Source: Tetramitus jugosus (taxonomy: Eukaryota > Protista > Heterolobosea). Taken from it: a stretch of DNA of 64,000 nt. Shown one piece after another: positions 576 to 48,859 of the stretch. Each line of letters begins with the position of its first letter. Within the stretch, counting starts at the first letter, position 1. The stretch lies in assembly GCA_937625935.1 (NCBI GenBank), contig OW569380.1:124001-188000 (forward strand). Reading direction: 5' to 3'. Made by a program: the position numbers and the translations under genes. The notes beneath the pieces were generated by a model that saw only the letters and a list, made by a program, of their open reading frames with translations, ran no database searches and was not told where the DNA came from.

Positions 576-660
576 AGGACATAGTGTGAATCGAACACAC
601 GACCATAGGATGATGTTGCATTATTTGCAATCCCATGCTCTACCGCTGAGCTATATGTCC
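576..660 (-). tRNA. tRNA-Cys(GCA) with 13-nt canonical intron
   Basis: Minus strand GGACATA TA GCTC AGCGGTA GAGC A TGGGA TTGCAA [ATAATGCAACATC] A TCCTA TGGTC GTGTG TTCGATT CACAC TATGTCC T. The intron follows position 37. A T7 Pol III terminator lies at 562-568. Confidence 0.93.
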
Positions 661-725
661 CTGTGCGATCTCAAACCAATAGCAATCCCTGAAAAAACGC
701 GGACAAGTACAAAAAACACGAACAC

Positions 726-1730
726 ATGTCAACACAAGGACCGTCAGCACAGGCGGTAATGATCCGCAGAAGTCAATATGTAGTATGGACAAAGATGAGT
801 AAAGAAGCAGCAATGAAGAGAAATGAAGCAGTTGTCACTGGTAAGTGCAACAATGTGACCCCAGAAGCGATAGTTAATAAGATAGTAGCTAGTTGTTCTG
901 AGTGGGTAGAGAGGGTTCAAGTGATTAGAAGAGGAGAGAGTTACAAGGCGTGGATAATCAGAGGTGACAAAGTGTGGGAATTCATTCAATGGTTTAACTG
1001 CACAAAAGTGTTGAAGGATTCCACGGCGGGGGTCAATGGTAGGATGAGAGCCACACATGACGTCGTCATTACTGGAACTGGAAAGATAAGCAAGGAGGAC
1101 ATTGAGACCTGGGCTGGTCGGGATAATGTACACAGAGTTGAATTGAGAGGAAACTCTGCCATTGTATCCACCAAAAATCCTAGATGTGCAAATACACTTC
1201 TGGAAAAGACACCCATCAACAACACCAAGACAAGAAAATTCGTGCACAAAGCTCTTGGGCCTATGGAGATACTGAAGAGAACTGTGACTCAACTACAGTC
1301 TGATATGAACAAAATGTTGGATGAATACAGAATTAGTGTGGAGCAAATCCGAACTCTTAAGTCAGAATTAATGAAGATGAGACTCAGAGTGAGTAAAATG
1401 GACGGAGCTTACAAGAGAGCTGAATTGGAAGCAACAACACCAAATGTGTTAGTGGAGGAACCACATGAGACAGTGCAAGCGATGGAGGAAACAGTAAACG
1501 CCCCTGTGGCACAGATCAAAAACAGAGGAAAACAATCATTCGATAAGGGACAGAGGAGATTGGATGACTTTGTCAACAACAGAGGTAAGAAGCGAGATGC
1601 CAGAGAAGTGGAGGAAGATGAGATACAAAGAAAGATAATAATGAGAAATTCTCCTGGTGGAACAATTCAAGTGAGCAGCACTCAAGAGAGTGCGGTGTCA
1701 CCCCAAGAGAATGACCAAAGTGAGCAATGA
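726..1730 (+). CDS. Retrotransposon ORF1 protein (334 aa; putative RRM-like repeats plus coiled coil)
   Basis: Intact ORF directly before APE-RT ORF2. Homologous to ORFs at 8768-9259 and 47478-48722 (YxVWT...VVxTG...RVQVI...AW motifs). Heptad region LKRTVTQLQSDMNKMLDEY. Confidence 0.85.
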   Translation: MSTQGPSAQAVMIRRSQYVVWTKMSKEAAMKRNEAVVTGKCNNVTPEAIVNKIVASCSEWVERVQVIRRGESYKAWIIRGDKVWEFIQWFNCTKVLKDSTAGVNGRMRATHDVVITGTGKISKEDIETWAGRDNVHRVELRGNSAIVSTKNPRCANTLLEKTPINNTKTRKFVHKALGPMEILKRTVTQLQSDMNKMLDEYRISVEQIRTLKSELMKMRLRVSKMDGAYKRAELEATTPNVLVEEPHETVQAMEETVNAPVAQIKNRGKQSFDKGQRRLDDFVNNRGKKRDAREVEEDEIQRKIIMRNSPGGTIQVSSTQESAVSPQENDQSEQ

Positions 1731-4285
1731 GCACAACTCTCAAAGTTGTATGGTACAACATCAGAGGATTAGGAAGGAAACGGAATGATGTTGTTGCCAT
1801 GATGAGTCGGTCCCTAGGATCGATGTTTTGATGCTGCAAGAGGCTAGTTGCAAGAACGAGAAGGTCAAGTTGGCTTTCGAAAAGCAGTTGGAGTATGCTG
1901 GGTGTGCGTTGATACACACCAACGCAGTTGACAGGGTGATGAGTATTATCAGAAGAGATAGTATACATGAGTACCGAACGCTGGTGACGAACAATAGATT
2001 TCTGGCAGTAGAGGTTGCAAAGGGAGATCTGCGAGTCACGCTGGTCAACCACTATGGACCTCACAAAAAAGAAGAAGGAGGGCAACACTATGTGAGGGTC
2101 AACGAGCAACTGAGGGAGCTCTCATGTAGGGGTAAATTGTTGTTTGGAGGGGATCACAATACAGTGCTTGCTAGCACTGAAAGAACTTCTGGAAGGCTAG
2201 ACGTCAATAGTGCGCATTTCAAGGCTCTAGTGGAGGGCCTCCAATTGAGCAATGTAAACACGGTGACAGATAGGCCATTTCCACACTTTCTTCAGAGGCG
2301 AGTTTTCTTCACGCATTGACACGGTCTGGTGCAATCCATCTGCAACTGAAATAGTTAGAGATGTGGAGAGGTACACGGCTAATGGAGTAGGGAGCGATCA
2401 CATACCTACTATGGTAGAGGTCTGTTGGACAAAAACGGATGAACAAGAGCCTACAGAGGCGAAAACAAAGTTCCCAAAGAGGGATAACAAGATGTGGGTG
2501 GAGTACTCTAAGGAGGTGGTAGGAAAACTCGATAGGGCCAACCTCTCGGGACTGGAGGCAGAGGAACAATGCAGCAAGATCACTATGATCTTAAAGGAGT
2601 GTGTGGAGATGTTCCCGAAAAGAAAACCAATTACCAAAGGGGTTGATAATCGTAGAGTTAGGCGCTGGTTGAAGGACAGAAAGGTGTTAGTGGAGAGACT
2701 CTCCTCTCAGGATACTGGAGATCAGAAGCTAAGGAGTGTTTGCCAAGCCTACAATGAGGACAGTACTTTGATAGGAGTGATAAAGACACTGAAAGTGGTT
2801 GAGAGGTTGATACAGTTGGAAAGAGCCCGCCGGGCCAACAAGAGATTCAACAAATGGCTGTACAAAGCCAGAACGTCTGAATTTGTTGACCCTCGCTTCT
2901 TCTTCAATGCCGCTACAGGCAAGAAGGCGATGAGACTAAGGTTCAAGTGCTACAAAAGTGGGGAAAAGGTGGTCACGGAACCGGAGAAAGTGGCGGAAGG
3001 AACATGCTGCTAACTATTTTGAAGAGGTTTTCGAGCAGGACTTTGCGAACATGACCTTCCTTGATGAGATGAGATGTAGAACTGAAAGTATGGAAGACAA
3101 ATTTCCTCCTTTCAAGGTTGAGGAGGTTCAACAATCCCTAAAGTGGCTGCAAAATAACAAAGCACCGGGAGTTGATGGAATTTTCAATGAAATGCTGAAG
3201 TTAAGACACACCAAAGAGAGAGACTACAGGTTTGAGCTCGCTGAAACATTAATGGTATTCTTCAACAAAATACTGGAGACGGGGCAATTCCCAAGTGAGT
3301 GGAAGAGATGCATTATCGTTCCAGCATACAAGAAGGGCTGCCCTATGTTGATAGCGAACTTCCGACCTATTTGCCTGTTGAGCGGACTGTCAAAGGTGTT
3401 CACACGGTTGCTGAATCAAAGAGTGTCAGCTGCTGCCGAGATAATGGGTGTCTTTAACAACGCACAAGGCGGAGGCCGCAAAATGCGAGACATAAGAGAG
3501 AAACTGTCGATCATCAGAGGAGTGATCGACCACGCAAATAGGAAGGATAAACAGCTATATCTTCTGCTCACGGATATCTCGAAGGCTTTTGATAGCGTAC
3601 CACATAATGCCGTCACGGCTGCCTATCGGTTTTTCAACTTCCCAGAGCACATCATCATACTTGTCAGGAACATGTTGGAGTCGAATGTGGCAACCATCGG
3701 AACACAACGTGCCTCCAGACCAATCGATATCAACAGGGGTACAAGGCAAGGTGATTCTTTGTCTCCGACGACCTATGTGATTGTTCATCAGTTAGTGCTG
3801 CTGTATGCAAAACTCAGAGCAAGCGGCTACCAAGCTATGAGCCAGAAAATCTGGAACGTGGCTTACGTAGACGACTGTAACCTGTTCAGTGATAAGCTAG
3901 ATGATTTACAGACGATGGCCAATGATATGTACAGAGCACTCAAGTGGATAGGACTTAGCATGCACCTGGATAAGCTGGAGTTCTTCGCTAGGAAAGAGGA
4001 CAAGGATCCGGTGACGATCAGAGTAGCTAACAGAGTAATCACTGCAAAGAACAGACACGCCGGTTTCAGAGCTCTTGGCCTCTTCACAAACCTCAATGGA
4101 GACAGAGGCTCAGAAGAAACAAGCAAAGCAGAAAGTAATGAGAATATTGAATCGGCTGAGGATGCTGAGATTGGGACCTAGTCAAGCAGCTAGAATTGTG
4201 AACACTTGTGTGCATCCTGTATTTCTGTTCGCCTCGGAGTTCACCCACTGGCCTAAGAAGTGGATGAACGAGATAGAAGGTATTG
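1727..4285 (+). pseudogene. Retrotransposon ORF2 (APE endonuclease + reverse transcriptase), frameshifted
   Basis: ATG overlaps the ORF1 stop (ATGA). APE motifs LKVVWYNIRGL, LQE, GGDHN, GSDHIP. RT motifs KAPGVDG, FRPICLL, DISKAFDSV, QGDSLSP, YVDD. Several frameshifts. Confidence 0.92.
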
Positions 4286-5455
4286 CAGATACATCACATG
4301 GATCAGAAGATACTTGTGTACTATCAGTGACATCATTCATTTCAGCATCTCCAGATTCATCAACAGGAGCAGGTGGTCCACCTATCTCATCATCACCTGC
4401 ATCTTTCGGCATTACCATTACCATCTGGATTAAACTCAGTCATCATCACTGTCTGTTGGATCACTTCCATCCTCTGCATCAGCCTTCCATCGAGCACTCT
4501 CAACGAATTTATCATTTCCAAAGTAGAAGTGCTTCAGATCTCTGGCACAGACATAGTAATCTGTTGTAGTCTTTGGTTGTTCACTCTTCTTGAAGCCACC
4601 AGTTTCCAACCATTGCAGTTTGTACTTGTTTATACCTATTCCATCCTTGTCGGTAGCTTCGCTGACAATCATTTCCTTCCGACACCACAAGTAATCACGA
4701 GATGAGCGATCGTACTCTCACTAGAACAATATCTCTCTGCTCATAGTGATCCACACAATTTGGATGCTTCTTCAGATAACGAGATCTGGCAGCTTCTCCA
4801 GCTTTATCATTCTCACGTATTGTGTTGATACAGAAAGCTCTCTGAACCAATTCATCAGAAGTCAATGCTTGCAGATCTAGAACTAGGCACTTAGCCCAAG
4901 CTTCCTTTGGACTCATCCCAATGGTACTGTGTTTGTTCTCCAGATATGTGTTCAAGATATTTGGTAACTCGTTCACCCATCTACTGGTGTTATGAGCTTC
5001 CATGAAGGCAAAGATCACTTCTTGATAGTCTGATTCAGACGTTCAACTACACCCTGCACCCATGGTGAATACGCAGGTCCTTCTTTCTTCTTAATACCAT
5101 ACTTGGCACACGTCTGTAAGATCACCTTTGCAATGAACTCACCACTATTATCTGAACGTAGATACACTTCATGTAATGGTTCTTGACCATCTTCTACTTC
5201 TGGCAATCCAATAGAATCAAAGCCAGAAGTAGAAGATGGTCAAGAACCAGTGGATCATACTTAGAGTTGATCCCTCTCAGTTCCTCAATATCTTCTACTG
5301 ATACTCCTTCATTGAGTTCACATGCTTCTTCTGATAGTTTTCTATACAGATTCCCATCTCGATAGGTATAGATACTTCTTTCATTATCAGATAGCTCAGC
5401 CTGTTTACCATTCACGAATGCAGTTTTCACTCTATTTGCTGTTGTATCTTTGATA
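4286..5455 (-). pseudogene. Disrupted rve-type DDE integrase (Ginger/SCAND3-like DNA transposon or LTR-derived)
   Basis: YLRSDNSGEF...GPAYSPWVQGVVERLNQTIKK / WVNELPNILNTY...HSTIGMSP is the integrase core with a frameshift. The N-terminal catalytic Asp region appears to be deleted. Confidence 0.8.
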
Positions 5456-5597
5456 GGGCGAATACATGACCGGATGACGTGATGATGTTGTTTCTTTTGT
5501 TGTTGAAACGGTTTCTGTTGGCGGGAAAAGGGCGGCATGTAGAAATGACAGAATGCAATGGATACATGATGGAGAAAAGTACACAGCCAATCACATA

Positions 5598-7823
5598 TCA
5601 CATACCTACGATGGTAAAGGTATGGTGGACAAAGGTGGAGGAACGAGGGTCCACGGAAGAAAAGCCCAAGTTCCCAAAGAGGGAAAACAAGATGTGGATA
5701 GAGTACTCAAATGAGGTGGTTGAAGGGCTAGATAAAACCAACATGGCGGAAATGGATGTTGATGAACAATGTGACCGGATCACTATGATCTTAAAGGATA
5801 CAACCGCAGAGTAAGACGTTGGCTGAAGAATAGAATGGTTTTAGTAGAAAACACCGGCTCACCGAAGCTCATGAGGGTTTGCAATGCATAAAAGGAGGAC
5901 TGTACTCTGAGAGGTATTTTGGCATCACTGAAGATTGTCGTTGGACTTGTACAAGTTGAAAGAGCCCGTAGGGCTAACAAGAGGTTTTCCAAGTGGTTGT
6001 ACCACACCAGAACTACAGAATTCCTAGACCCCCGATTCTTCTTCAATGCTGCCACAGGTAAGAAGGCACTGAGGCTAAGATTCAAGAGTTACAAGAGTGG
6101 AGAAAAGGTAATCACTGCCCCGGAAAAGGTAGTTGAGCATGCTGCTGATTACTTTGAGGAGGTGTTTGAACAAGAATTTGCAGACATGACGTTCCTAGAC
6201 GAGATGAGAGTATGGAGGATATATTTCCCCGTTCAAGGTGGAGGAGGTACTGCAATCCTTAAAGTGGCTGCTAAACGGTAAGGCACCGGGAGTCGACAAG
6301 ATAGTCAATGAAATGCTCAAATTGAGACACACCAAGGAAAGAGACTATAGAGTTGAGTTCGCAGATGTGCTGATGACTTTCTTCAATAGAATATTAGAGA
6401 CCGGGCAATTCCCGTGTGAAGTGTTGCTGCATGCAAAGCTAAGAGCAAGCGGCTACCAAGCCATGAGCCAGAGAATCTGGAACGTAGCTTACGCAGATGA
6501 CTGTAACCTTTTCAGTGATGATCTCCAGGACATCCAGTCGACGGCTAATGATATGTACAGGGCGCTCAAGTGGGTTGGTCTGAGTATGCACCCAGACAAG
6601 TTGGAGGTCTTTGCAAGGAAAGTGGGTGAAGCTCCTGTGACGATCAGAGTGGCTGATAAGGTGATTACTGCAAAGGACAAACACACAGGCTTTAGAGCAC
6701 TTGGGCTCTTTACAAACCTCAATGGGGACACAGAGGCCCAGAAGAAACAAGCAAAGCTGAAGGTACTGAGAATCCTGAATCGGTTGAGGATGCTGGGACC
6801 AAGTCAGGCAGCGATAATAGTGAACACCTGCATCCATCCTGTATCCTTGTTTGCTTCAGAGTATACCCATTGGCCAAAGAAATGGCTAAACGAAATCGAG
6901 GGTATTGGACGCAAGGAAGTGAAATATGGATCGAAGAGGGATTCCCTCTTTGCTGCTGTCAGTGGAGAGGGACAAAGGAGGTATTGGACTCAATGATTTC
7001 AAAGAGAGTCAGACGGCTAAGATCTCTGCCTTTGTCGTGGGGATGCTGCATGTAAGAGAGACACGGACACTTCTGTTGGATACGCTTGATGATGTCAATC
7101 ATTCGGTCGAGCATATTTCAATCCAATAATCGTCTTCGTGAGACCAAACACTCATACCTGTCTTGGTGCCAAACTTCTACATGGTTCTAAGGTTAAAGTA
7201 GGTCCCAAAAGGAGATCATGAATGTGAGAAATGCAGTATAGAGTGGCATCTCCCTACGGGAGGCGCAAAACTACTCATTCAAAGTGGAATTACCAAAAAC
7301 TCCCCACTCTTCGATGAGGATGGAAAATGGTAATCCCGTTAAAGGTACTCAAGGATAAGTGCTTACCTGGAAATTCTTGGTAAACCATGCGAAGAGAGAT
7401 GGAGGGAGCTGCGAACACCGAATGACACTCAGGAAGTGTATTGACACACACATGCGCGGGTGCGCCAGAGACGATCAGCCACTTATTGGTGGAATGTGAT
7501 AAGCCAAAAGGGTAAGGAAAGAACTGGTGGAGGAATTTAAAGCCAAATTGGACAAGCTGGAGTTTATGAGACCAGCCAAGCTAAAGATATGGTTCGATGA
7601 AGTGGTTTACGATGACGGGAAATTGGTACCACTAAGCCCAAGCCGAACCACTGAAGAAATCATAGCAAGGTTAATGGGAAAAGAGGATGATCAGAAGGAT
7701 ATATTGATGAAGGAGCTGGTTGTGTATGGTCGCAAGAAGAGGGAAATAAAGGTTAAAAGTCTGGTGAATGCAATGAAGAGGTGCATGGTTACAGTCCTGG
7801 AGATCATCGCTGAAAAGGCGTAA
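5598..7823 (+). mobile_element. Second, decayed subfamily-1 retrotransposon ORF2 (APE end to C-terminus) with internal deletions
   Basis: Paralogous to 2400-4285 (HIPTMV, DPRFFFNAATGKKA, YADD). RT segments are deleted in frame (GQFPCE|VLLHAKL). C-terminal IWFDEV motif. Confidence 0.88.
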
Positions 7824-8240: not shown

Positions 8241-9281
8241 CTTGTAGCTCATCAGATCACCCAGTGTGATCCTAGCACTCCTCTTCTTGTTGTCATTGAG
8301 TTGTGGACTTTGAATCTCCTTTTCGGAGTCGTAGTCCACATCCACAATGACTGGTTCGTCCTCAGTCAAACCATACCTTTTGCGTGCAGCAGCCAGCGCC
8401 ATTGCAGCAATTTCCTTTTTCACCCTGGCGAACACTGGAGAAGTGGCATTCACTTGCTCCAGAATTCGCCGGTTCTCCGCACTGAGCTGCACAACAGGCA
8501 CTGATGGCAGTGGTGTTGCTATAGTCCTCTGTTCTTGTGACTTCACTAGCTCAGTAGCAGTGCTTTGGACATGTTCTTGTTCCGGTATTGGAACCGGTTT
8601 GTTGCCCCCTTGACCCTTTGTCTTTCCCAATTCCTTGGTGAGTTCTGTGACATGTCGACGCAGTCCGTCAACCACCGTAAGCAGCTCCTCGTACATCTTT
8701 GTCAACCTCTTGTTGACAGTCTTGAGAGGATCATGTGGTCTCTCGACGTATCGAGTGACCGTGGCCTTTACCTTGTTCTCTCCACTGAGCACTGCTCGTG
8801 CATAGGTTTCATCACCCATGACCACGAATGCAGTGTCACGCTTCTTGAGCGCACTGGCAACCTTCTCAGGCCCCAGTAGCTTCTTGATGTCGACATGTTC
8901 TTCATGCCATGGACGACCACCTTTCTTGTGCAATCGATACTGCGCTTGGGTGCAGCAGTGCTGTTGCCAGTCCTCTCTTTGTTGAAGAACTCAACAAACT
9001 CATAGATGCGGTCACCCTTGACCGTCACCCATGCAACAAAGCGTTGCTGGCCTTTCCTCTTGATGACTTGGACTCGGTTGAGCCAGTCACCAAACTCCTC
9101 TCCTATCTTTCTTGCCCAAGATGACTGAGAGACACAATTACCGTTGCCAGTAATGACGACCTCTCTGTCACTTGGCGCAGAGCCTTTCCGTGCAGTGGTC
9201 CACACTGCATAACGGCTGTTGCCGTATTCCTTCACCAATTTTGTTGAATCACCAGACATGTGATTCCGTTTGCTTCTGCGT
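8241..9281 (-). mobile_element. Subfamily-2 retrotransposon ORF1 (one frameshift near 8900), upstream of the tRNA-Lys pseudogene
   Basis: ORFs 8768-9259 and 8187-8933 together align with the intact ORF1 at 47478-48722 (EYGNSRYAVWTT, KKRDTAFVVM, QSPQLNDNKKRSARITLGD). Confidence 0.85.
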
Positions 9282-9337
9282 TTTTTGTTTTTTGCTTTAC
9301 TAATTCGGATAATTTGGGAGGGAATGATTATCCAAGC

Positions 9338-9398
9338 CAGTCGGTAGAGCGCAAGGCTCTTAACCTTGTGGTCGAGGGTTCGAGCCCCTCGGTGGGCG
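9338..9398 (+). pseudogene. tRNA-Lys(CTT) pseudogene lacking the 5' acceptor strand
   Basis: CAGTCGGTAGAGC G CAAGG CTCTTAA CCTTG TGGTC GAGGG TTCGAGC CCCTC GGTGGGC G. The GCCCACC partner strand is absent upstream. Confidence 0.85.
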
Positions 9399-15641: not shown

Positions 15642-15712
15642 CTCGAGCACCGGGAATCGAACCCGGGTCGCCAGAGTGACAGTCTGGAATGCTACCCCTA
15701 TACCATGCCCGA
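15642..15712 (-). tRNA. tRNA-Asp(GTC)
   Basis: TCGGGCA TG GTAT AGGGGTA GCAT T CCAGA CTGTCAC TCTGG CGAC CCGGG TTCGATT CCCGG TGCTCGA G, followed by TCTTTTT. Confidence 0.93.
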
Positions 15713-15768: not shown

Positions 15769-17580
15769 TGGTTTTCCGGAAGGAATTGTAAGACTTGTGA
15801 GTGGAATGGTTAGAGACAATTTTGCGCGAGTGCTCACGTCATCCTTGTCACGGAGGTTCCACATAGGTAAGGGAACGAGACAGGGTGATTCCCTCTCACC
15901 AACAACATATGTGCTGGTACATCAAAAAGTGCTGATGTATGTTAACAAAAGAATGGATGGATACAGGGCTATGTCACAAAGGCTGTGGAATGCTGCATAT
16001 GTAGATGAATGCAACTTGTTCGCTGAGTCCAGAGCAGACATAGAAAGAGCTGCAGAAGCGATGTCCTCAGTTCTCGGATCACTTAGGATGACCATGCATC
16101 CTGACAAGCTGGAACTGTATGTGAGAAAGTCGGAAGACGACAATTGTCATGACATAGCGGTGAATGATGCAGAATGGTTTGATAAAGTAAATTTGCTGGG
16201 CAGAAGTCTAGTGAGGCATGGATCTACTGCTATGCCGCGATTTCCGGTGGATATTCTCTCAGTAGGAGACGAAAAGGGGTTGATGGGCTTGAGGGACATC
16301 GAGGAGACCATCACGACCCGTACTTCGTGGTTCGTGTACTCGATGATAATTGGGAAGAGGGACACCGAGGCTAGACAACTGTTTCTTGGCACGCTTGAGG
16401 AAATCAAGCAAACACAAACATTCCAAAATGAGAATGTATTCCAGTCAAGAAACAGGCTTGAATTTGTCAAGCACTCCTACCTCAAGTGGTGTGCATGCAG
16501 AATGCACAAGCATGAAATACGTGTCACCAAAACTAATCCCTACTGTGATAGTTGTTGGTTGGCCAGGTATGTACCAAGTGCAATTCTCAAGAAGCAGGCA
16601 GGTATCACAAGCCGTGAGCAACTAATGGTGGACGATCACCCACTGTGTCTGAAGGAATTTAAACATATTTTTCCCTCCTGCAAGGTCGGAGCAATGTCGT
16701 TTGAGGTGCTGAAAGTGTTAATATCCCAAATGAGTGGGTGTGGATGCGAAGGGAAGAGGTCCATCGAAGGTGCAGAACCGGACTTGTACAAAGGAAATCT
16801 GCATGTGGAAAGTAGATCGCATCTACAGTCGCTGTTTGATCAAGAAAGAAGTGCAAGAATTGATGAAGACGAGCGATGTTGGCTACAGAGGGCAGCAAAT
16901 AACAGCGGTGCAGATTTTAGCTTCCTCAAATACCCCCATGGTATAGACAGGAAGATGGAATGGTTTCATGCACAGGTACGCAGTGGAACACTCCACACAG
17001 CAGAAGTTGTACGATATCTATACAACACTGGTGAGGAACAGATCATGTGCAGCTGGTGTCAGAGTGAGCCCGAAAGTGTACTACATTGTTTGATCAGGTG
17101 TCCAAGGGCCATTATGATTAGAAGGCAATTGGCTGTGAAAGTGGGGCATGAGCTCAAGAATATGGGAATTCCGGACTCTGCCTACGCCGATGTTTGGTTT
17201 GATGAGGTGCGACTGAAGGAAGGAAAGGTTGTGAGGCAACCAATCAAAAAGTCTAGCCGTGAACTGCTGCAAGGAATGATGGGCATAGAAACGGATGCCA
17301 TCATGGAGGTCGCTGAGGGTCTTATGTCTGGAGGAATGAAGAAGCCACTGGCACAGAAGAAAGCCAAAACATATGTGAACAGTGTCAAGAGGAGATGTCT
17401 TAAGACTCTCCACCACCTGTTCACTACAACGAAGGAGAAATGTAATCAACGGCAATGACGCTCTCCGAGAATCATTGCCTACCAACTGGTAACCAACCAG
17501 GGCCTACGCTCTTCGAGCGTAGGCAAGTGAATAAGCAAGACAATAAAAAGCAACCGAAATGGTTGTATTTAAAAAAAAAA
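15769..17580 (+). mobile_element. 5'-truncated non-LTR retrotransposon with poly(A) and 17-bp TSD, upstream of tRNA-Asp
   Basis: TSD ttgccacaacaaaaagt at 15752-15768 and 17581-17597. A10 tail at 17571-17580. RT motifs QGDSLSP and YVDE (mutant). C-terminal CSWC...HCLIRC zinc knuckle. Stop at 17458. Confidence 0.95.
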
Positions 17581-17597: not shown

Positions 17598-17787
17598 CTG
17601 TCTGTGGACTGTAAAGAGGGCAATTACATCAGCTTACTGGTATTTCGGCTATCCGGAGAGAATCATTTCTCTCATCCAAAATATGCTTGAGTCAAATGAG
17701 TCAAGAATAGGAGCACAGTGTAAGTCCCGAAAGTTCTATGTTGATTGTGGAAATAGGCAGGGCGATTCTCTCTCACCAACCACATAA
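17598..17787 (+). mobile_element. Older 5'-truncated RT fragment stacked behind the 15769-17580 element
   Basis: AITSAYWYFGYPERIISLIQNMLESN...RQGDSLSPTT begins immediately after the distal TSD copy. Confidence 0.85.
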
Positions 17788-19159
17788 AACGGCTGATGGA
17801 CTTTTTGAAGAGTCACGATTGTAATAAGAAAGATTTAACGAAATTTTTCATTGATTCTAACAGAGGTAGAGAAACTTTGTTTGAAAAAAGATCATTTGTA
17901 CTTTTCAAAAAAGTATCACATACAATGCAAGCTCGAAGTTTGAGGTTTTGAACTTTAGAAAAGTTCTATCATCGATTTCAAACATAGTTACTTCGTTTGT
18001 ACGTCATTACCCTGTACGGATTTCTCAAATTTGTATAATGTGCTTCAAAAAGAACACTCTGAAATACCTTTTTCGCTTGATACAGATTTTTTGTACACGA
18101 GAACATAACGGAGAAAACTTAGGAAGGTAGCTTTCCACTATTCAAAAAAGATGATCGTAACTGCAACAAGCACGATCACCACAATATCATTTTCAGCAAA
18201 CTTTTAATGACTCTTTGTTGATGGTGCTGAGAACTCTATTCTACCACCAACACCAATAGCTACTAACCAACAACAATAACAACTTGCTCTCCAAAGCGCC
18301 AAAAAAATGTTAACCTCTGAAAGCAACATACTCTATTAAATAAGTATTTGGTTAACATGTCGTTGAATGAAATCAATCTTAATTCGAGACACGCAAAAAA
18401 ACTTTACTGCTTGTTGCACCAACGAGACACCCAACAGAATGGTGGGTGATACAGTCTTGGACTAGTCTGTGCCTCATTTTGCGTCTAGCTAAGTCCCCCA
18501 TGACTCGACAACCAGGAAGAATACCTTTTTCACTGGAAGGTCGTGCCCCCTTCGACCTTCCAGTGAAAATTGCACTGCTCATCCTAAGCAAACCACGATA
18601 TTTATGAAGGAGTAACAATGCACTCCACACACTTGATTTTCGTTTCCGCACATTGTGATGATATTGAGACATAACCAATTAAAACCAATGAAAATTTTTC
18701 TATAGCATCATAAGATGCAAGGGAAGAACTGGTGATCAGCGCACTTACAAGATTCGTCCTGTGAAAAATAACAGGACATGAAACAGGCCCGCTTGATGTG
18801 AGTTGCGTAGAACTTCAGAGCCAAAAAATTGGTCAGATAAAACTCCGACTGACCGGGTTAAAAACGGTGAAATGGAAATCCGATTTACCGGCAAATTCTT
18901 GGTGAGAATTGAGTGTTGTTTGATAACCATGTCACAACAAGGTTGTTTCGGGTTCTAAACCGAAAAAAAGTGTTTCCATAAGGGAAACACTCGCTGGACC
19001 ATAAAAACGATATTTTTCGGCGCAAAAGAAGATTGCCACTGTTATGACTCGAACACAAGACCTTGTCCACGGCAGTTTGATACTCTTCCATCGCAAATCG
19101 GAACGGATGCTATGGACTCTACAGCTCCACACCAATACCGCTTTATCTCGTTTAACGAA

Positions 19160-20545
19160 GCAGAAAAAACGGCATCACATGTGGTGATTCACAAAATTGG
19201 TGAAGGAATACGGCCACTATGCAGTGTAGATCACTCGCACACGGAAAGGCTCTGCGACAAGTGACAGAGGTTATCATTACTGGTAGTACGATAAGAATGT
19301 GGCGGCTGGCTCAACCGAGTCCAAGACATCAAGATAAGAGTCGAACAACGCTTTTTTGCTTGAGCGACTGTCAAGAGTGACCGCAACTACGAGTTTGTTG
19401 AGTTTTTCAGCAAACATAAGAGAAATGACAACAACACTGCTGCATTCAAGCGCAACTGGAGCCTGAAAAGATTGCTAGTGTACTAAAGAAGCGAGAAACT
19501 ATTTTCTAAATTATGGATAATATTATACACGAGTAGTGCTCAACCAAGATAACAATGAAAATACACGATCAATCAAAATATCGAGAGATCACATGATCCT
19601 TTAAATGATATAAGTAGAGGCTCACCAAGATATAAGAAGCATCGTTGGTAGTGATTGACGGACTGCGTAGTCATGTCGCAGATCTCACCAAGTACTGCAA
19701 AAGACAACGGGTCAAGGGCAAGAGAAGAAGAGTGAGGACGTCACTCACAAAATATAGTCATAAATGCACACATAAATGAGCAATCGTGTGCTTGTGCAGC
19801 AAGCACACATGGCTGTATGAAAATTTTTTTAACGTATCGCATGTCTGAGGTTGGTTAAGGAACAAAAACTAAATGAATAACAACAGTCGTTATGACATTT
19901 GCACCCCTTATCTATTCATTTCTTAATATTCCATGGCATGAAGAACATGGACATCAAGAAGCAGCTGGACCTGAGAAGGTTACCAGCGCACTCAAGAAAC
20001 ATGACACTGCTTTCGGGTCATGGGTGATGAACAAAGACCATTTGAAACGGCGAGAGACTGCATCATCTCGAGGATGTCAACAAGAGGTTGAAGAAGATGC
20101 AAACACACAAAAGGTATGGTTTGATTGAGGACGAATCAGTCATTGTGGATGTAGATGGCTCCGAAATGTTCAGAGCCAAAGCTCAATGACAATAAGAGGA
20201 GTGTTATGATCACACGAAATAATGCACTCACAAGAAAATAACAGATATCTGTGTGTCCATCGAAGAAGAGTGAGTGGCCTACGGGACGTCATTTACAAAA
20301 CTAGTCAATAAACGAGCAATCGTGGTCTTTCTGCGTAAAAGGGCCTTGCAGAAAACGTACAGAAGCTGTAAATACAACAATCGGTTATCTTATTCGAGGA
20401 AGTGGCTTCCTGATTAGAAAGACAGAGATAAGTCTCCTACAACCTAAGAGGGCTAATGTAATCTGCTATTTCTGCTAATATCCAACAATAAAGTTGGAGC
20501 AGGCCAAGAACGCACAACTCAAGTGGTGCGCGGAGAGCACACAAA
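19160..20545 (+). mobile_element. Highly decayed subfamily-2 retrotransposon (ORF1 plus ORF2 remnants)
   Basis: Nucleotide similarity to 8241-9281 (ggtgattcacaaaattggtgaaggaatacgg). ALKKHDTAF motif. APE-start remnant VSYNLRGL near 20435 and LKWCAE near 20520. Confidence 0.75.
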
Positions 20546-38309: not shown

Positions 38310-38725
38310 TTTTTTTTTAAATCCAACCATTTACCTCTTTTTATTGTCTTGCTTATTCACTTTGACATAGTATGCCTGGCTAGTTACCGGTTGGTAGGCA
38401 ATGATTCTCGGAGAACGTCATGGCCGATGATTACATTTATCTTTCGTTGTAGTGAACAGGTGGTGGAGAGTCTTAAGCAGTGGCTTCTTCATTCTTCCAG
38501 ACATAAGACCCTCAGCGATCTGCATGATGGCGTCCGTTTCTATGCCCATCATTCCTTGCAGAAGTTCACGGCTAGACTTTTTGAGTGGTTGCCTCACAAC
38601 CTTTCCTTACTTCAGTCGCACCTCATCAAACCGAACATCGGCGTAGGCAGAGTCCGGTCTTGAGCTCATGCCCCACATTTACATCCAATTGCCTTCTAAT
38701 CAGAATGGCCCTTCGACACCTGTCT
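38310..38725 (-). mobile_element. 5'-truncated retrotransposon 3' end (same subfamily as 15769-17580), upstream of tRNA-Glu
   Basis: Reverse-complement near copy of 17095-17580. T9 at 38310-38318. Degenerate flanking repeat 38285-38309 versus 38732-38757. Confidence 0.9.
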
Positions 38726-38798
38726 CGTTCCCTTTCCGAAGTGGCCATCTGGCGTGCAAAATTGGGGAAATATTCACAAAAGATGTAAAATATATCTG

Positions 38799-38871
38799 TC
38801 CCATATAGTCTAGTTGGTTAGGATACATGGCTCTCACCCATGAGACCCGGGTTCGAGTCCCGGTATGGGAG
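38799..38871 (+). tRNA. tRNA-Glu(CTC)
   Basis: TCCCATA TA GTCT AGTTGGTTA GGAT A CATGG CTCTCAC CCATG AGAC CCGGG TTCGAGT CCCGG TATGGGA G, followed by TTTTT. Confidence 0.96.
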
Positions 38872-44254: not shown

Positions 44255-44531
44255 TTTTTTATTTCCATACAACAGTTGTTGCCACTTTAATCTATACACC
44301 ACAGTGAGATATGATTCCGCTCAGCACCGTTAGGTGATGAGCTGTGTTCATCTCTCTTCACAACAGAATTGATATACACCCCAGATTCAATCGATTTTGC
44401 CCTCATCTGCCCGAAATGCTCCTCTAGACCTTCTCTGACATTTGTGTTGCTCAACGCTTTATCACTTATCAACACTTCCAGAGTGTCATTCGTTGTTCTC
44501 CGCTCCTTCCATCTCTTTTCACATGGCTTGG
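44255..44531 (-). mobile_element. Stack element D: short retrotransposon fragment with TSD gtgaagttagaatg
   Basis: TSD at 44241-44254 matches 48750-48763. T-tract, terminal caaca-ac-tgttg motif, and body similar to 7383-7440. Confidence 0.8.
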
Positions 44532-44542: not shown

Positions 44543-46145
44543 TTTTTGTTTTTTTTAATACAACACGTAGTTGCTCAATTTATTGTGTATCATTCTTTCA
44601 AATAGTTTCTCTTATTCTCACTGTGCCGCTCTTCGAGCGGCACTTATCTTTCCTTTCAGTAACGCTCGGAGAGCGTTACTGCTGTTTGTAGTCTTTTGAT
44701 TGCTGGTAGAGTTTGTGCAAAGTAACGATGCAGCGACTCTTTACCCAACTAACAAAGCTTCGTGCCTTGCGATGTGCTAGTTCTAACTTCATTCCATTCT
44801 TCACCAATGCATCGATAACTTCGTCAAGAGCTTCACTCTCAATGCCCATCATTCCCGAGAGGTACTCCCGACTGGTCTTCCGGGATCTCGGGAAAAGTAC
44901 CCCGTTTCTGAACACCACCTTGTCAAACCAAAGATTCACAGTCGACCCTCGATGCAATGGGAGTCTGAGCAGTTTGTTATAAACTTCCAACACAAGTTTT
45001 CGACGAGCATCGATTGCACACTTGCACCTGATCAGACAGTGAATGATGGTTTCAGACTCAGTGCCGCACCTTGGACACTGATCCGGTTTGTCATCATCAT
45101 ACAAATCATTACACACTGATCTAGTGTGTAATGTGCCGCTTCTGATCTGTGCATGGAACCATTCCAATTGACGATCTATCACAAAGGGGTTCTTGAGAAA
45201 CTCGAATTGGTTCTTGTGCTCCATTGCGGCAGTTTGCAACCACCACTCTGGATATTGATCAATTGTGGCCTTTCGTTCCCTGAAGAGCATTTCTTTAAGG
45301 TCATCTCGGCCTCTGGCGTATTGTCCATTACATCGGATTATTTGCATAAACCCCTTTGAGGGATGTAAATCCTTACTCATACATTTTGGCATTTCCTTGA
45401 CAGTGAGTATCAACTCCTGATAAGTCTTTAGGCCGAATCCTCTTCCAATCTCAGTTTTTAGTGCCTCGAAACTTCTAACTTCGCCATCTTGCAGCAGTTG
45501 TTGCTTCTGATAGAGTCCCGCTCTGCTCAGTAACCTCAATTGTCTTGTTGTTAGGTAATTTGACAAATTACACCCCTCGCAACGACTATGAGAGTCGTCA
45601 GTGATGATAATTCCCTTCTTGTGCAATCTAACAGCACACCATTTCATAAAGGAGTGTTTGACGCAGTTGATTCTGTGGTCCGATTGGAAGACGTTCTCCA
45701 ATTGGAATGTGTATTGTTGCTTGATATACTCAAGTGAGTCGTACCACAGAATCCTAGCATCCTCATCTCTCTTCCCTCTCATCATAGCCTTCACAAACAA
45801 TGCAGTGCGAATCGTCACTGCTTCAGAGAAGTTCTCAAGACCGATAGAACCCCATTCTGGGCCTACATAGAGTAACTCACTGGGGTATCGCTTCATTGCG
45901 ACTGATTCGTGCTTCACAAGTCTCTTTCCTATGCTCGAAACCTCATCAAGTTGTTTCTTAGTCCACTTGGTGAACTCACATGCATATAGGAAGATGGGTT
46001 GGATGCACACATTTACGATGCGTGCGACTTGTCTCGCACCCAGGTTCATGATTTTGAGTCGCTCAATGACTCTCTGACAGTCTCACGTAAAGTTCCAGTT
46101 TCTTGGGTGCATCTGCATCTTCAAACTAGACAGTAAACTGTTCAT
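44543..46145 (-). mobile_element. Stack element C: 5'-truncated ORF2 (RT end plus CCHC zinc knuckle), TSD gcttgggtgaagttaga
   Basis: ORF 44676-46049 with WFHAQIRSGTLHT and CPRC...HCLIRC. TSD at 44526-44542 matches 48744-48760. Confidence 0.92.
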
Positions 46146-46152: not shown

Positions 46153-47328
46153 TTTTTTTTTTTTTAATACAACCAACTGGTTGCTCTGTTTTATTATCTG
46201 AATATTTACAATGGATAACGCTCAAAGAGCGTTATCTCCTCCATTACTTCTTAATTCTAACAATGGTGCCCGTAGGGCATCATTGTTTTGTTCCTTCCTT
46301 ATAGGAGGTGTACAATTGGTGAATGGTTTCGACGCACCTCCTTTTCACTTTGTTCACAAATGTTCTGGCTCTCTTTTCCGCAATATCTTTCTTGATTCCG
46401 TTCTTCCTCATCCCTCTCATAATTTGATCCACTGCTTCCTTCTCTACACCCATCATACCTAGGAGGAACTCTTTGCTCGATTTTCGGTTTGGTTGCACAC
46501 TCATCTTACCTCCTTTCCAACACACCGAGTCGAACCATAGGTCTATCTTGTGTTTTGGATGGACTCCCAGACCACTCAGTTCATCACCGACCGACATAGC
46601 CAGTCTTCTTCTAATCAATATGGCTCGTGGACAGCGATGAGACAATGTAGAATAGTCTCTGACTCCTTGTTACATCTTTCACACACGGTTGGAGCTTCAT
46701 TTTTTCCATACAATACCCTCATGACTTCTCGAGTGTGCAAAGTACCACTGCGCACTTGTGCATAGAACCATGCCAGCTTTCTGTCAATCTTGTGGGGGTA
46801 CTTTAGAAAACTAAAGTCTACCCCACCATCCATTGCTTCAACTTGTAACCACCACAGACCACCAATCTCTCTAATCCTGCAGACTCTCATGCTCCATTCG
46901 CAACTGTATTTGCTCTCTGCTCTCGACGGGATATTGTCCTATCATCAAAGTTTGCTCTACAGAGACTCTGGCGTTAGTTTCTAACGTCGAAGTGCACTCA
47001 CATTCATTCATTTGTGACACCATTATTGTCAACAACTCATGAGACCTTGGTCCAATCTTGCATCCTGGGAACTTGTTTTTGATTTCCTTTAAACTCATGA
47101 CTCTCACACCAACCATCAGTTGATTTCTGTTAGTGATTCCACCCTTGAACAGCTTCTTGAGAATAGTTGTTGGAACATACCGGGCAATGTTGTGGTGGGT
47201 GCTCCCATTGTTAAGTGTAATGCCTTGGGTGTGCATCCTTTGCGCACACCACTTAAGGTAAGTGTTCTTGACGTACTCGAGGCGGTTGCTTGACTGGAAG
47301 ACATTCTCATGTTGGAATGTTTGTGTGT
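46153..47328 (-). mobile_element. Stack element B: 5'-truncated ORF2 C-terminus, TSD tgttcatgcttggg
   Basis: T13 at 46153-46165. Frameshifted ORFs with QVRSGTLHT and CERC...HCL. TSD at 46139-46152 matches 48737-48750. Confidence 0.92.
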
Positions 47329-47337
47329 TGTTCATGC

Positions 47338-48731
47338 TTTTTTTTTTTTTTTTTAATACAACAAATGGTGCTGACGCACCACGTTGCGGAACTTTTATTT
47401 TTCTTTTGTGTGAGAGCAGGCTTGCCTGCTCTCAATTGCCTAACATGATTTGGTGCTTGCCCAGTGGAGTGGCAGGCCTACGCAACAGGATTCATTCTCT
47501 TCTTGGAATGTTGTTTTGATCCCTTCTTCAGGGATTCGTTGCGAGGGCCTCCACTACCATCTGGAGCCCCACTGGTGAGGTCAGATGGCTCCGTAGTCCT
47601 AGCCAGTTGGTAGGACCTCCGGAGAGCACCTGACTTGATGCTGGCCAACCTGGCCGGGATCTTGTTGGCAGCAGTGTCACCAACGGTGACACGTGCTGAT
47701 CGCTTCTTGTGTTCGTTGAGTTGGGGACTCTGTAACTCACAGTCGGGGTTACTGAGATCCAACTCAACTGGATCTTCTTCGGTGGTTGTGCTTCTTGCAC
47801 GGTCCACCATGATTGCTCGGGCAGCAATCTCCTTCTTGACTTTCTTGAACACCTCGGAGGTGTTCAATACTAGCTCGAGGATTGCTCTGTTACGAGCATC
47901 CTCATCAATGGTGTTGTTGGTTGGCTCTTGGGTGACCGTAGTTGGAGTGGCGGGATGGGACTCCGGCATGATCGACTCCCAGTCATCGGTCGTAGACGGA
48001 GTCGAAGGTTCGAATTCGGAGATTCGCTCCGGCGTCCTTGGAGACGGGGATGCGAGGGGAATCCGGTTGACGGAAGCCATATCTTTTAACACACTGACTT
48101 GGTGGCGCAGGTCGTCCACCACAGCCAGTAGCTCTTGGTACATCTTGGTCAGCCTCTTGCTGACAGCCTTGACAGGATCACGTGGGCGTGGAAGGAAGCG
48201 CTTTGCTTCCACCTCCACTGGCATGGATTGAACGTTCCGAAGCAAAGCTTCGGCATACGTTTCGGACTCCATCACAACAAAGGCGGTGTCGTGCTTCTTG
48301 AGCACGTTCTTGACCTTTGTTGTGCCAAGCATGGCCTTGATGTCGTCCTCCGTCTTACCTTTGACACCGTGGAGGACGACCTTCTTGGCACAATCTACGT
48401 TGTGCTTGAGTGCTGCCTTGCAGCCACTCATCTTCTTGTTGCGGTTGAAGGATTCAACAAATGGGTAAATGTTGTCATCAACAACAGTTACCCACGCAAC
48501 AAACCTCTTGGGGCCCTTCTTGATGACTTGGACCCTGGTGAGCAAATCACCAAAATCCAAGCCAATCTTCTTGGCCAAGGCAGCCTTGGGAGAGTCATCA
48601 CACTTTCCAGTGATGATGACCTCCTTGCTGCTTGGCGCAGTTCCTCTTGGCGCTGTGGTCCACACAGCATAGCGTGGATTCTCATACTCACGAACAACAG
48701 GGGTGTGTGTTCGTTTTTTCATCGGCGTTTT
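47338..48731 (-). mobile_element. Stack element A (youngest): ORF1-only non-autonomous retrotransposon, TSD tgtgttgttcatgc
   Basis: T17 at 47338-47354. TSD at 47324-47337 matches 48732-48745. A single intact ORF1-type reading frame with no APE or RT. Confidence 0.92.
47478..48722 (-). CDS. Subfamily-2 ORF1 protein (intact)
   Basis: Homologous to 8187-9259 and 726-1730. The track's ATG at 48743 lies inside the TSD, so the element's own ATG is probably 48722 (MKKRTH). Confidence 0.85.
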   Translation of the reverse strand: MKKRTHTPVVREYENPRYAVWTTAPRGTAPSSKEVIITGKCDDSPKAALAKKIGLDFGDLLTRVQVIKKGPKRFVAWVTVVDDNIYPFVESFNRNKKMSGCKAALKHNVDCAKKVVLHGVKGKTEDDIKAMLGTTKVKNVLKKHDTAFVVMESETYAEALLRNVQSMPVEVEAKRFLPRPRDPVKAVSKRLTKMYQELLAVVDDLRHQVSVLKDMASVNRIPLASPSPRTPERISEFEPSTPSTTDDWESIMPESHPATPTTVTQEPTNNTIDEDARNRAILELVLNTSEVFKKVKKEIAARAIMVDRARSTTTEEDPVELDLSNPDCELQSPQLNEHKKRSARVTVGDTAANKIPARLASIKSGALRRSYQLARTTEPSDLTSGAPDGSGGPRNESLKKGSKQHSKKRMNPVA

Positions 48732-48786
48732 TGTGTTGTTCATGCTTGGGTGAAGTTAGAATGTGTCGATCTAAATTAAATATACC

Positions 48787-48859
48787 GCCGAAATAGCTCA
48801 GTTGGGAGAGCGTGAGACTGAAGATCTTAAGGTCGCGTGTTCGATCCACGCTTTCGGCA
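48787..48859 (+). tRNA. tRNA-Phe(GAA)
   Basis: GCCGAAA TA GCTC AGTTGGGA GAGC G TGAGA CTGAAGA TCTTA AGGTC GCGTG TTCGATC CACGC TTTCGGC A. Confidence 0.96.

What the first reader, a model, noticed from the sequence alone, without database searches (positions are those of the whole stretch)
576..48859. tRNA-gene-targeted non-LTR retrotransposon system: every tRNA locus has a head-to-head insertion just upstream
Seen: all five tRNA loci (Cys 576-660 -, Lys-pseudo 9338-9398 +, Asp 15642-15712 -, Glu 38799-38871 +, Phe 48787-48859 +) have an element of the APE-RT family upstream, always with its 5' end facing the tRNA. TSDs map to -40..-56 (Asp) and -42..-55 (youngest at Phe). ORF1 ATGs lie about 65-67 bp from tRNA +1 at Cys, Lys and Phe. 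The same subfamily hits different tRNAs (Asp and Glu; Lys and Phe) with unrelated TSD sequences, so targeting is positional rather than sequence-specific. Known: Dictyostelium TRE5-A inserts ~50 bp upstream of tRNA genes in this orientation, via an ORF1-TFIIIB interaction. Inference: an independent or previously unreported Pol III-tethered retrotransposon family in a non-dictyostelid, heterolobosean-like protist.
Basis: partly seen in the sequence, partly recalled or inferred. Interest (0 to 1): 0.95.

Follow-up and report, generated by a model that had tools for sequence, protein, structure and literature searches.

The report
LINEs that home upstream of tRNA genes
A soil protist that is not a slime mould, and is probably a heterolobosean, carries a large, still-active family of LINE-type jumping genes that insert about 40-55 bases upstream of tRNA genes, always head-to-head, a habit so far described only for the TRE5 and NLTR-B elements of dictyostelid amoebae.

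Summary
All five tRNA loci in the window carry APE+RT non-LTR copies upstream, each with its 5' end facing the tRNA.

The pattern holds across the genome:
- All 30 best ORF1 loci are linked to a tRNA gene: 24 directly, the rest stacked behind another copy or beside a tRNA remnant.
- 14 of 26 sampled nuclear tRNA genes are occupied, so "every tRNA locus" is true of this window only.
- 25 target-site-duplication (TSD) pairs put the insertion at a median of -41 to -55.
- By coordinates alone, at least two 5S genes are also hit.

The elements:
- ORF1 folds as two RRM-like domains followed by a coiled coil. ORF2 carries APE, RT and a CCHC motif.
- The 5' UTR is only 6-21 nt. The 3' end is a short hairpin, a conserved tail motif and poly(A).
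- Two abundant ORF1-only derivatives of about 1.4 kb are near-identical between copies, so they are young.

Twelve ORF1 lineages share the target rule, some with only about 41% ORF2 identity. The rule is positional and old. Tethering to TFIIIB/Pol III is inferred, not shown.

The host is not a dictyostelid. The best named match of its mitochondrial rps12 is a heterolobosean. The RT forms its own long-stemmed clade. Its relation to TRE5 could not be tested.

The scan noted this system on many other windows of this genome (84 unchecked notes).

The parts
576..660 (-). tRNA-Cys(GCA) with a short intron; target gene 1
   Evidence: Rfam 60.5 bits. The loop read directly gives GCA. ARAGORN miscalls it Ala.
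693..4335 (+). Element with a full 5' end, of the L001-like lineage. ORF1 is intact (726-1730). ORF2 is frameshifted and cut at about residue 870. The ATG lies 66 bp from tRNA +1.
   Evidence: tblastn gives 77% identity to L001 ORF1 and 73-89% to L001 ORF2. Pfam RVT_1 E = 2.3e-27.
5593..7814 (+). Older, decayed ORF2 copy (residues about 228-1261, with deletions), pushed away from tRNA-Cys by the later insertion.
8616..9285 (-). ORF1 remnant of the short 'L048-type' lineage. Its ATG at 9259 faces the Lys pseudogene.
9335..9390 (+). tRNA-Lys(CTT) pseudogene with its 5' acceptor strand lost; target gene 2
   Evidence: Rfam 32.4 bits, model positions 9-63. Read directly.
15642..15712 (-). tRNA-Asp(GTC); target gene 3
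15769..17580 (+). 5'-truncated copy (3' half of ORF2, from the last part of the RT domain to residue 1285), with 3' hairpin and poly(A). It is flanked by a 17-bp duplication at 15752-15768 and 17581-17597, which is -40..-56.
17620..20889 (+). Older same-strand fragments stacked behind the Asp insert: an ORF2 piece at 17620-17784, an ORF1-type remnant at 19160-20215, and a weak ORF2 piece at 20538-20889.
   Evidence: No other RNA gene is found there.
38310..38743 (-). Short 5'-truncated copy (ORF2 residues about 1089-1282, then poly(A)). Its decayed duplication lies at about -42..-55 from tRNA-Glu.
38799..38871 (+). tRNA-Glu(CTC); target gene 4
47338..48731 (-). P1, the youngest Phe insert. It is an ORF1-only element of 1.39 kb: 9-nt 5' UTR, intact 414-aa ORF1, 3' hairpin and poly(A). 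Its 14-bp duplication lies at 48745-48732 and 47337-47324, which is -42..-55.
46153..47329 (-). P2, a 5'-truncated ORF2 copy with stops. Its 13-bp duplication lies at 48750-48738 and 46152-46140.
44543..46145 (-). P3, a 5'-truncated ORF2 copy (residues 814-1285, open frame). Its 17-bp duplication lies at 48760-48744 and 44542-44526.
44255..44531 (-). P4, the oldest and shortest copy in the stack. Its 14-bp duplication lies at 48763-48750 and 44254-44241.
48787..48859 (+). tRNA-Phe(GAA); target gene 5.

Best explanation
The window holds part of a genome-wide, lineage-specific superfamily of poly(A)-tailed, APE-type non-LTR retrotransposons (LINEs). They integrate by target-primed reverse transcription into a narrow window upstream of RNA polymerase III genes. 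The targets are tRNA genes of any kind and, less often, 5S genes.

Shown:
- The poly(A) end joins the target at about -41 from tRNA +1.
- The 5' end joins at about -55.
- About 15 bp of target is duplicated.
- The element always points away from the tRNA gene.
- New copies land between the gene and the older copies, which builds same-strand stacks.
- ORF1-only derivatives of about 1.4 kb keep the 3' hairpin and tail motif and are the most numerous young copies.

Inferred: the site is read from a protein landmark rather than from DNA sequence. The most likely landmark is TFIIIB, or the Pol III pre-initiation complex, which sits just upstream of every active Pol III gene. An element protein would tether to it, as proposed for TRE5-A ORF1. 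This protein is either the ORF1 tandem-RRM/coiled-coil protein or ORF2. The ORF1-only copies would be moved in trans by ORF2 of the autonomous lineages.
For: Element anatomy:
- ORF2 of 1285-1299 aa carries Exo_endo_phos, RVT_1 and zf-RVT and an invariant Cys2-His-Cys (CCHC) motif near the C-terminus.
- The ORF1 stop overlaps the ORF2 start.
- The 5' UTR is only 6-21 nt. All copies end in poly(A) and are flanked by perfect duplications.

Position and orientation:
- 25 duplication pairs lie next to tRNA genes. The median proximal edge is -41, the median distal edge -55, and the length 9-22 bp.
- All 30 top ORF1 loci are tRNA-linked.
- 14 of 26 sampled tRNA genes are occupied. All 14 are head-to-head and none has a tail-facing insertion of its own.
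- P < 1e-60.

Positional rather than sequence-specific:
- Targets include Val, Ser, Cys, Leu, Gln, Phe, Lys, Gly, Tyr, Thr, Ala, Glu, Asn, Trp, Asp, Ile and Arg.
- The duplicated sequences are unrelated.
- Two 5S genes have elements head-to-head, at about 50 bp (C13) and about 600 bp to the RT match of a 5'-truncated copy (C10), judged by coordinates.

Age of the rule: 12 ORF1 lineages (21-60% identity) and ORF2 lineages down to 41% identity share it.

Recent activity: at least 12 ORF1-only copies are 98.8-100% identical in protein, with intact frames.

Precedent: TRE5-A ORF1 binds TFIIIB subunits in vitro, and TRE5-A.2 (ORF1-only) is moved in trans (PMC3159450, PMC5911963).
Against: - No protein-protein contact was tested.
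- ORF1 has no detectable sequence kinship to anything known, so its role in targeting is argued by analogy only.
- 5S occupancy looks far lower (at least 2 of 47) than tRNA occupancy (about 54%). This may mean that TFIIIC or A/B-box features matter as well as TFIIIB, or only that the tables were incomplete.
- A few old fragments lie away from any recognised Pol III gene (window 14799-15034 and 24970-25235; L023).
Confidence: 0.85

Rival explanations
1. Open-chromatin targeting. The elements insert wherever DNA is nucleosome-free, and the upstream flank of tRNA genes is simply the most accessible DNA. No specific tether is involved.
For: Regions upstream of Pol III genes are nucleosome-depleted in other eukaryotes (general knowledge; discusses nucleosome arrays upstream of tRNA genes).
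Against: - Accessibility alone does not give a nick position fixed to within a few base pairs (17 of 25 distal edges fall at -53..-58).
- It does not give a strict single orientation: 14 of 14 on the tRNA side and 24 of 24 on the ORF1 side.
- None of the ORF1 loci or tRNA loci examined had a copy placed at a protein-gene promoter.
Confidence: 0.06
2. Retention bias. Insertion is near-random, and selection in a gene-dense 26-Mb genome leaves only copies in harmless spots next to tRNA genes.
For: The genome is compact, with long open frames packed closely in the window.
Against: - The youngest copies (98.8-100% identical, perfect duplications, long A tails) already show the exact position and orientation.
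- Selection cannot impose one orientation or a 15-bp-wide window.
- Downstream flanks and other intergenic DNA in the loci examined hold almost no copies.
Confidence: 0.02
3. Sequence-specific endonuclease. The APE domain recognises a DNA motif that happens to lie upstream of tRNA genes, as R1, Tx1 or Keno-type elements recognise their targets.
For: Site-specific APE-type LINEs exist (own knowledge of the R1/Tx1 groups).
Against: - The duplicated target sequences and the bases next to the nick are unrelated across loci and across tRNA species.
- The one shared feature is the distance to tRNA +1.
- Later insertions use element-derived sequence as their target when stacking.
Confidence: 0.04
4. 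The tRNA genes belong to the elements, carried as a promoter or spread with them by segmental duplication. On this view they are not targets.
For: The tRNA genes and elements are always adjacent.
Against: - The tRNA lies outside the target-site duplication and on the other strand.
- Each lineage sits next to many different tRNA species.
- Flanks beyond the duplication differ at every locus.
Confidence: 0.01

Closest known systems
TRE5-A/B/C of Dictyostelium discoideum (tRNA gene-targeted non-LTR retrotransposons)
   Same: - Inserts about 40-54 bp upstream of tRNA genes in the opposite orientation.
- Also hits 5S genes.
- Has ORF1 plus an ORF2 with APE, RT and zinc-finger domains.
- The ORFs overlap.
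- Carries an oligo(A) tail and a 3' hairpin needed for mobility.
- Has an ORF1-only non-autonomous form (TRE5-A.2) moved in trans.
- Its ORF1 proteins are highly divergent yet keep the same target rule.
   Different: - The host here is not a dictyostelid and is probably a heterolobosean.
- There are no A/B/C modules. The 5' UTR is 6-21 nt, against a 200-bp promoter module plus a 290-bp B module in TRE5-A.
- No close sequence kinship was seen: no dictyostelid protein was among the 20 best ORF2 relatives whose source names were looked up, including the ten most AT-rich of the two hit lists.
- A tree with TRE sequences could not be made.
NLTR-B of Polysphondylium pallidum
   Same: A non-LTR element unrelated to the TREs that sits 39-64 bp upstream of tRNA genes. 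It is the precedent for convergent evolution of this site preference.
   Different: NLTR-B has an RNase H domain in place of the zinc finger and three separate ORFs. The present family has a CCHC motif and no RNase H domain.
Ty3 of Saccharomyces cerevisiae
   Same: Uses TFIIIB bound upstream of Pol III genes as the landmark.
   Different: Ty3 is an LTR element with an integrase. It inserts 1-4 bp from the transcription start and can do so in both orientations.
Half-L1 (HAL1) elements of mammals and TRE5-A.2
   Same: LINE derivatives that keep ORF1 and the 3' end but lack ORF2, and that outnumber their autonomous partners.
   Different: - The HAL1 comparison rests on my own knowledge and was not checked here.
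- In this genome there are two such families, each about 1.3-1.4 kb.
- The 3' tail motif of each matches one of the two autonomous groups.

Membership tests
APE-type non-LTR retrotransposon (LINE) | ORF2 with an N-terminal AP-endonuclease-like domain followed by a reverse transcriptase | tested here: met
   Exo_endo_phos E = 1.9e-5 (25.0 bits; cut-off 24.5) and RVT_1 E = 1e-24 to 3e-27 in full-length copies.
APE-type non-LTR retrotransposon (LINE) | Poly(A) 3' end, variable target-site duplication, frequent 5' truncation, no LTRs | tested here: met
   Truncated copies are seen at Asp, Glu, Phe, L025-L028 and L032-L034.
TRE5 (dictyostelid tRNA gene-targeted retroelement, 5' type) | Integration about 40-54 bp upstream of tRNA genes, transcriptional orientation opposite to the tRNA | tested here: met
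   The median duplication spans -41..-55. All orientations are head-to-head.
TRE5 (dictyostelid tRNA gene-targeted retroelement, 5' type) | Modular UTRs (A-module promoter, B- and C-modules) | tested here: not met
   Only 6-21 nt lie between the duplication and the ORF1 ATG, and no repeated modules are present.
TRE5 (dictyostelid tRNA gene-targeted retroelement, 5' type) | RT nests inside the TRE clade | not testable with these tools
   No TRE sequence was returned by any search. The six ORF2 lineages form their own clade (SH-aLRT 100, stem 1.2 substitutions per site) among the 64 best database relatives.
TRE5 (dictyostelid tRNA gene-targeted retroelement, 5' type) | ORF1 protein binds TFIIIB subunits | not testable with these tools
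   The host TBP, Brf1 and Bdp1 could not be fetched. No complex prediction was run.
TRE5 (dictyostelid tRNA gene-targeted retroelement, 5' type) | Host is a dictyostelid | tested here: not met
L1/Tx1 superfamily | C-terminal Cys/His (CCHC) motif in ORF2 | tested here: met
   An invariant Cys2-His-Cys (CCHC) pattern and a zf-RVT match at E = 1.3e-4, below the curated cut-off.
L1/Tx1 superfamily | RT groups with L1 or Tx1 in a tree or by best similarity | tested here: inconclusive
   The only solved structures matched are R2 RTs (E = 8e-23), and no L1 ORF2p chain matched at E <= 0.001. The tree had no labelled references.
L1/Tx1 superfamily | L1-type ORF1 (Transposase_22: coiled coil, then RRM, then CTD) | tested here: not met
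   There is no Pfam match. The model shows two RRM-like folds followed by the coiled coil.
Sequence-specific LINEs of small-RNA genes (Keno, Mutsu, Dewa types) | Insertion at one defined sequence inside the RNA gene | tested here: not met
   Insertions lie outside the genes, in unrelated sequence.

The most novel reading that the evidence does not exclude
These LINEs may have no promoter of their own. Only 6-21 nt lie before the ORF1 start, and the 5' end always lands about 15-25 bp beyond the place where TFIIIB/TBP should sit. Each new copy might therefore borrow the tRNA gene's upstream promoter region for divergent transcription. Targeting would then be needed for expression as well as for safety. 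The same data also leave open a fully independent, convergent origin of TRE5-like homing in Heterolobosea.
Probability: 0.15. Interest if true: 0.8.

Novelty: new variant of a known kind. Interest (0 to 1): 0.62.

Why it matters
All Pol III-gene-homing LINEs listed in the surveys read here come from dictyostelid amoebae. The origin of TRE5-type targeting is stated to be unknown, because no such element was found in other amoebozoans (PMC5006619).

A second system is described here. It is large, diverse and apparently active, in an unrelated free-living protist, with the same -40/-55 head-to-head geometry but different proteins and UTRs. This has three consequences:
- It gives an independent test case for how a target-primed LINE can read a protein landmark.
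- It shows that 'safe-haven' homing recurs in compact protist genomes.
- It offers twelve divergent ORF1 lineages in which to look for the conserved surface that does the targeting.

It also matters for annotating this genome. About half of the sampled tRNA genes carry stacks of these elements.

Tried and rejected
- **Bulk fetch of RT loci.** The later 5S search returned coordinates only. The census therefore rests on 30 ORF1 loci, 26 tRNA loci and 6 full-length loci.
- **Read laying.** The run on window 43500-49400 was meant to look for empty sites in four other runs. No read evidence was obtained, and those letters were not sent to any search tool afterwards.
- **Typed-sequence script.** It was redone from the files.
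- **Distant relatives.** Environmental contigs L068 and L069 (about 23% identity) show no tRNA gene. They are too short at the 5' side to be informative.
- **ORF1 kinship.** PDB by sequence and the Atlas by features gave nothing usable.
- **Search for dictyostelid TRE proteins.** Names were looked up for the ten top-ranked and then the ten most AT-rich ORF2 relatives. All were unnamed metagenome proteins or arthropod proteins.
- **Paper search for assembly GCA_037189345.1.** This assembly holds a 58%-identical ORF2. The search found nothing.
- **Complex prediction.** It was not run, because the host TFIIIB sequences were out of reach.
Full report
**1. What is in the window**

ARAGORN and Rfam agree on four tRNA genes: 576-660 (-), 15642-15712 (-), 38799-38871 (+) and 48787-48859 (+). 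Rfam adds a partial tRNA at 9335-9390 (+).

Read directly:
- The first gene has the loop U-GCA followed by a short intron.
- The partial gene is a tRNA-Lys(CTT) that has lost its 5' acceptor strand.

I took full-length copies from elsewhere in the genome and searched the window with their proteins. Every one of the five loci has element sequence on the strand opposite to the tRNA, starting a few tens of bases upstream of it.

**2. Anatomy of the element**

Five full-length copies (L001-L005) share this layout:
- A 5' UTR of only 6-21 nt that begins with a run of A.
- ORF1 of 336-463 aa.
- ORF2 of 1285-1299 aa. Its start codon overlaps the ORF1 stop.
- A short 3' UTR that ends in a small hairpin closed by CAAC/GTTG, then TAT, then two G or T residues, then poly(A).
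- A target-site duplication of 9-24 bp.

ORF2 carries Exo_endo_phos, RVT_1 and a weak zf-RVT match, plus an invariant Cys2-His-Cys (CCHC) motif near its C-terminus.

ORF1 has no Pfam, PDB or Atlas kin. A model built from 12 lineages (pLDDT 77.6) shows two beta-alpha-beta-beta-alpha-beta units followed by a long helix. Foldseek matches it to tandem-RRM proteins. ORF1 is thus a plausible RNA-binding, multimerising protein, but it is laid out differently from L1 ORF1p.

In the 3' hairpin, the base pair just inside the invariant stem changes in a compensated way between lineages (C-G, T-A, A-T, T-G). This is modest support for a conserved RNA structure.

**3. The Phe locus is a dated stack**

Reading 44200-48900 on the minus strand shows four nested insertions. 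Each ends in poly(A), and each is flanked by its own duplication:

| Insert | Coordinates | Duplication |
|---|---|---|
| P1 | 48731-47338 | -42..-55 |
| P2 | 47329-46153 | -37..-49 |
| P3 | 46145-44543 | -27..-43 |
| P4 | 44531-44255 | -24..-37 |

Each later insertion used as its target a few bases of the earlier element's 5' end together with the earlier duplication. The order of events is therefore fixed, and every event hit almost the same distance from tRNA +1.

P1 is only 1.39 kb. It has an intact 414-aa ORF1 and the 3' end, but no ORF2.

The Asp insert has a perfect 17-bp duplication at -40..-56. The Glu insert has a decayed one at about -42..-55.

**4. Genome-wide test**

The genome is 26.35 Mb in 56 contigs.

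Element side:
- A profile of ORF1 found at least 98 copies.
- In the 30 best-scoring loci, 24 have a tRNA gene on the opposite strand with +1 lying 57-88 bp from the ORF1 start.
- Five sit directly behind the poly(A) of another copy, so they are members of a stack.
- One (L001) abuts the first 13 nt or so of a tRNA-Trp that something else has cut.
- Even if the genome held 1,600 tRNA genes, the chance of 24 of 30 is below 1e-60.

tRNA side:
- Of the 26 best-scoring nuclear tRNA genes, 14 have an element within 200 bp upstream.
- All 14 are head-to-head.
- The only wrong-strand hits, in L014, belong to a neighbouring tRNA-Gln.
- One odd fragment lies downstream of a tRNA (L023).

Position:
- 25 duplication pairs next to tRNA genes give a median proximal edge of -41, a median distal edge of -55 and a median length of 15 bp.
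- At least 15 tRNA species are hit, and the duplicated sequences are unrelated.

5S genes:
- They are dispersed, with at least 47 copies.
- By coordinates alone, two have an element head-to-head. One is at C13:105984, where an ORF1 ends about 50 bp away. The other is at C10:118604-118723, with an RT match starting about 600 bp away, as expected of a 5'-truncated copy.

**5. Diversity and activity**

Twelve ORF1 lineages below 85% identity were found. They are 21-48% identical to the Phe-type ORF1. The ORF2 lineages are 41-70% identical to one another. Every lineage has at least one copy sitting directly at a tRNA gene. The target rule is therefore older than the split of these lineages.

The Phe-type ORF1-only element has at least 22 copies among the top 30 ORF1 loci. 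Twelve of them are 98.8-100% identical in protein, with intact frames, long A tails and perfect duplications. This points to recent or ongoing activity.

A second short family (the 'L048 type', also about 1.3 kb) accounts for most of the roughly 40 further ORF1 matches. It ends in GTTGTATGG, as do the L001, L002 and L004 autonomous lineages. The Phe-type family ends in GTTGTATT, as do L003, L005 and L006. This fits trans-mobilisation of each short family by one of the two autonomous groups.

**6. Host and relatives**

Host:
- A host M1 aminopeptidase in the window has a 99% match only in a JGI metagenome record. Its best named matches are 40-43% identical and spread over unrelated eukaryotes. 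No dictyostelid is in the top 120.
- The stretch occurs in soil and groundwater runs.
- The mitochondrial rps12 (contig C54, about 20% GC) has many unnamed relatives on contigs of about 50 kb. Its best named match is Pleurostomum flabellatum, a heterolobosean, at 68% identity.
- This is single-gene evidence. I rate 'not a dictyostelid' as firm and 'heterolobosean' as likely.

ORF2 relatives:
- In an exhaustive profile search, the closest hits were fragments 50-97% identical to one or other of the genome's lineages. Those looked up come from environmental or NCBI contigs: P0242 (ENA metagenome), and P0241 in assembly GCA_037189345.1.
- Every full-length relative compared (six) is 22-29% identical.
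- In a tree with the 64 best relatives, the six lineages form one clade (SH-aLRT 100) on a stem of 1.2 substitutions per site.
- The only solved structures matched are R2 RTs.
- No TRE sequence could be obtained, so whether the family is related to TRE5 remains open.

**7. Comparison with what is known**

The 2018 review lists TRE5, TRE3, NLTR-A and NLTR-B, all from dictyostelids, as the only non-LTR elements that target Pol III genes. TRE5 sits at 40-54 bp upstream of tRNA genes and 37-41 bp upstream of 5S genes (PMC5911963). The 2016 survey found no TRE-like element in Physarum, Acanthamoeba or Protostelium (PMC5006619). A search for later reports found none.

Parallels with TRE5-A:
- The same geometry.
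- An ORF1-only derivative moved in trans.
- A 3' hairpin needed for mobility (PMC3159450).

Differences:
- The host.
- The near absence of a 5' UTR.
- No detectable close sequence kinship.

I therefore file this as a new variant of a known kind. It works like TRE5, but membership of the TRE family is not shown, and two of its defining features (modular UTRs, dictyostelid host) are not met.

**8. Mechanism**

Shown:
- Target-primed-type insertion, as indicated by poly(A), duplications and 5' truncation.
- A fixed distance and a fixed orientation relative to Pol III genes.
- Independence from target sequence.
- Stacking of successive insertions.

Inferred:
- Recognition of TFIIIB or the Pol III complex by an element protein.
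- Trans-mobilisation of the ORF1-only families.
- Translational coupling of ORF1 and ORF2.
- Either an internal promoter or a borrowed one.

**9. Limits**

- There is no whole-genome census.
I worked beside them and sent none of their letters to a search tool afterwards.
- There is no labelled RT phylogeny and no binding test.
- First-stage notes of this scan describe the same system on many other windows of this genome. They are unchecked and were used only as leads.

Noticed in passing
window 47338-48731; loci L043-L066: Two abundant ORF1-only element families of about 1.3-1.4 kb (ORF1, 3' hairpin, poly(A), no ORF2). In the ORF1 search table they make up most of the matches, and the RT search returned about as many matches, many of them fragments. 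The 3' tail motif of each family matches one of the two autonomous groups.
   Followed up: partly
L001 8540-8760 (G000:C16, about 364.5 kb): The full-length copy L001 abuts only the first 13 nt or so of a tRNA-Trp, and the rest of the gene is replaced by unrelated sequence. This fits an earlier first-stage note of another element that inserts inside tRNA-Trp.
   Followed up: partly
window 9335-9390: tRNA-Lys(CTT) pseudogene whose 5' acceptor strand is missing, although an element still sits at the usual distance. The gene was probably intact when it was hit.
   Followed up: partly
window 14799-15034: A 236-bp piece of the ORF1-only family (91% identical to 47382-47618), without hairpin or poly(A), lies about 600 bp downstream of tRNA-Asp. 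No Pol III gene lies upstream of it, so it is an off-target or rearranged fragment.
   Followed up: partly
L023 1842-2042 (G000:C17, about 456 kb): An ORF1 fragment lies downstream of a tRNA-Ile on the same strand. It is the only case in 26 tRNA loci that breaks the head-to-head rule. No second RNA gene was found there.
   Followed up: partly
G000:C54 and C56: Two contigs carry tRNA genes at identical coordinates and are about 20% GC. They look like the same mitochondrial genome assembled twice. They encode rps12 and rpl11.
   Followed up: no
G000, many contigs: The 5S rRNA genes are dispersed singly over the chromosomes (at least 47 copies). None of the copies listed is in a tandem array.
   Followed up: no
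window 20744-24103 (+): A 1119-aa open frame with no Pfam match begins inside decayed element remnants at the far end of the Asp stack. Whether it is a host gene or something element-derived was not examined.
   Followed up: no
L069 (Logan ERR11571142 contig, 5553 bp): A very AT-rich environmental LINE with ORF1 plus APE-RT-RNase H-zf ORF2 and a poly(A) end. Its layout recalls the dictyostelid NLTR elements. Only 106 bp of 5' flank is present, so no target could be read.
   Followed up: partly
window 576-660: ARAGORN labels the intron-containing tRNA as Ala(TGC). The anticodon loop reads GCA (Cys).
   Followed up: yes
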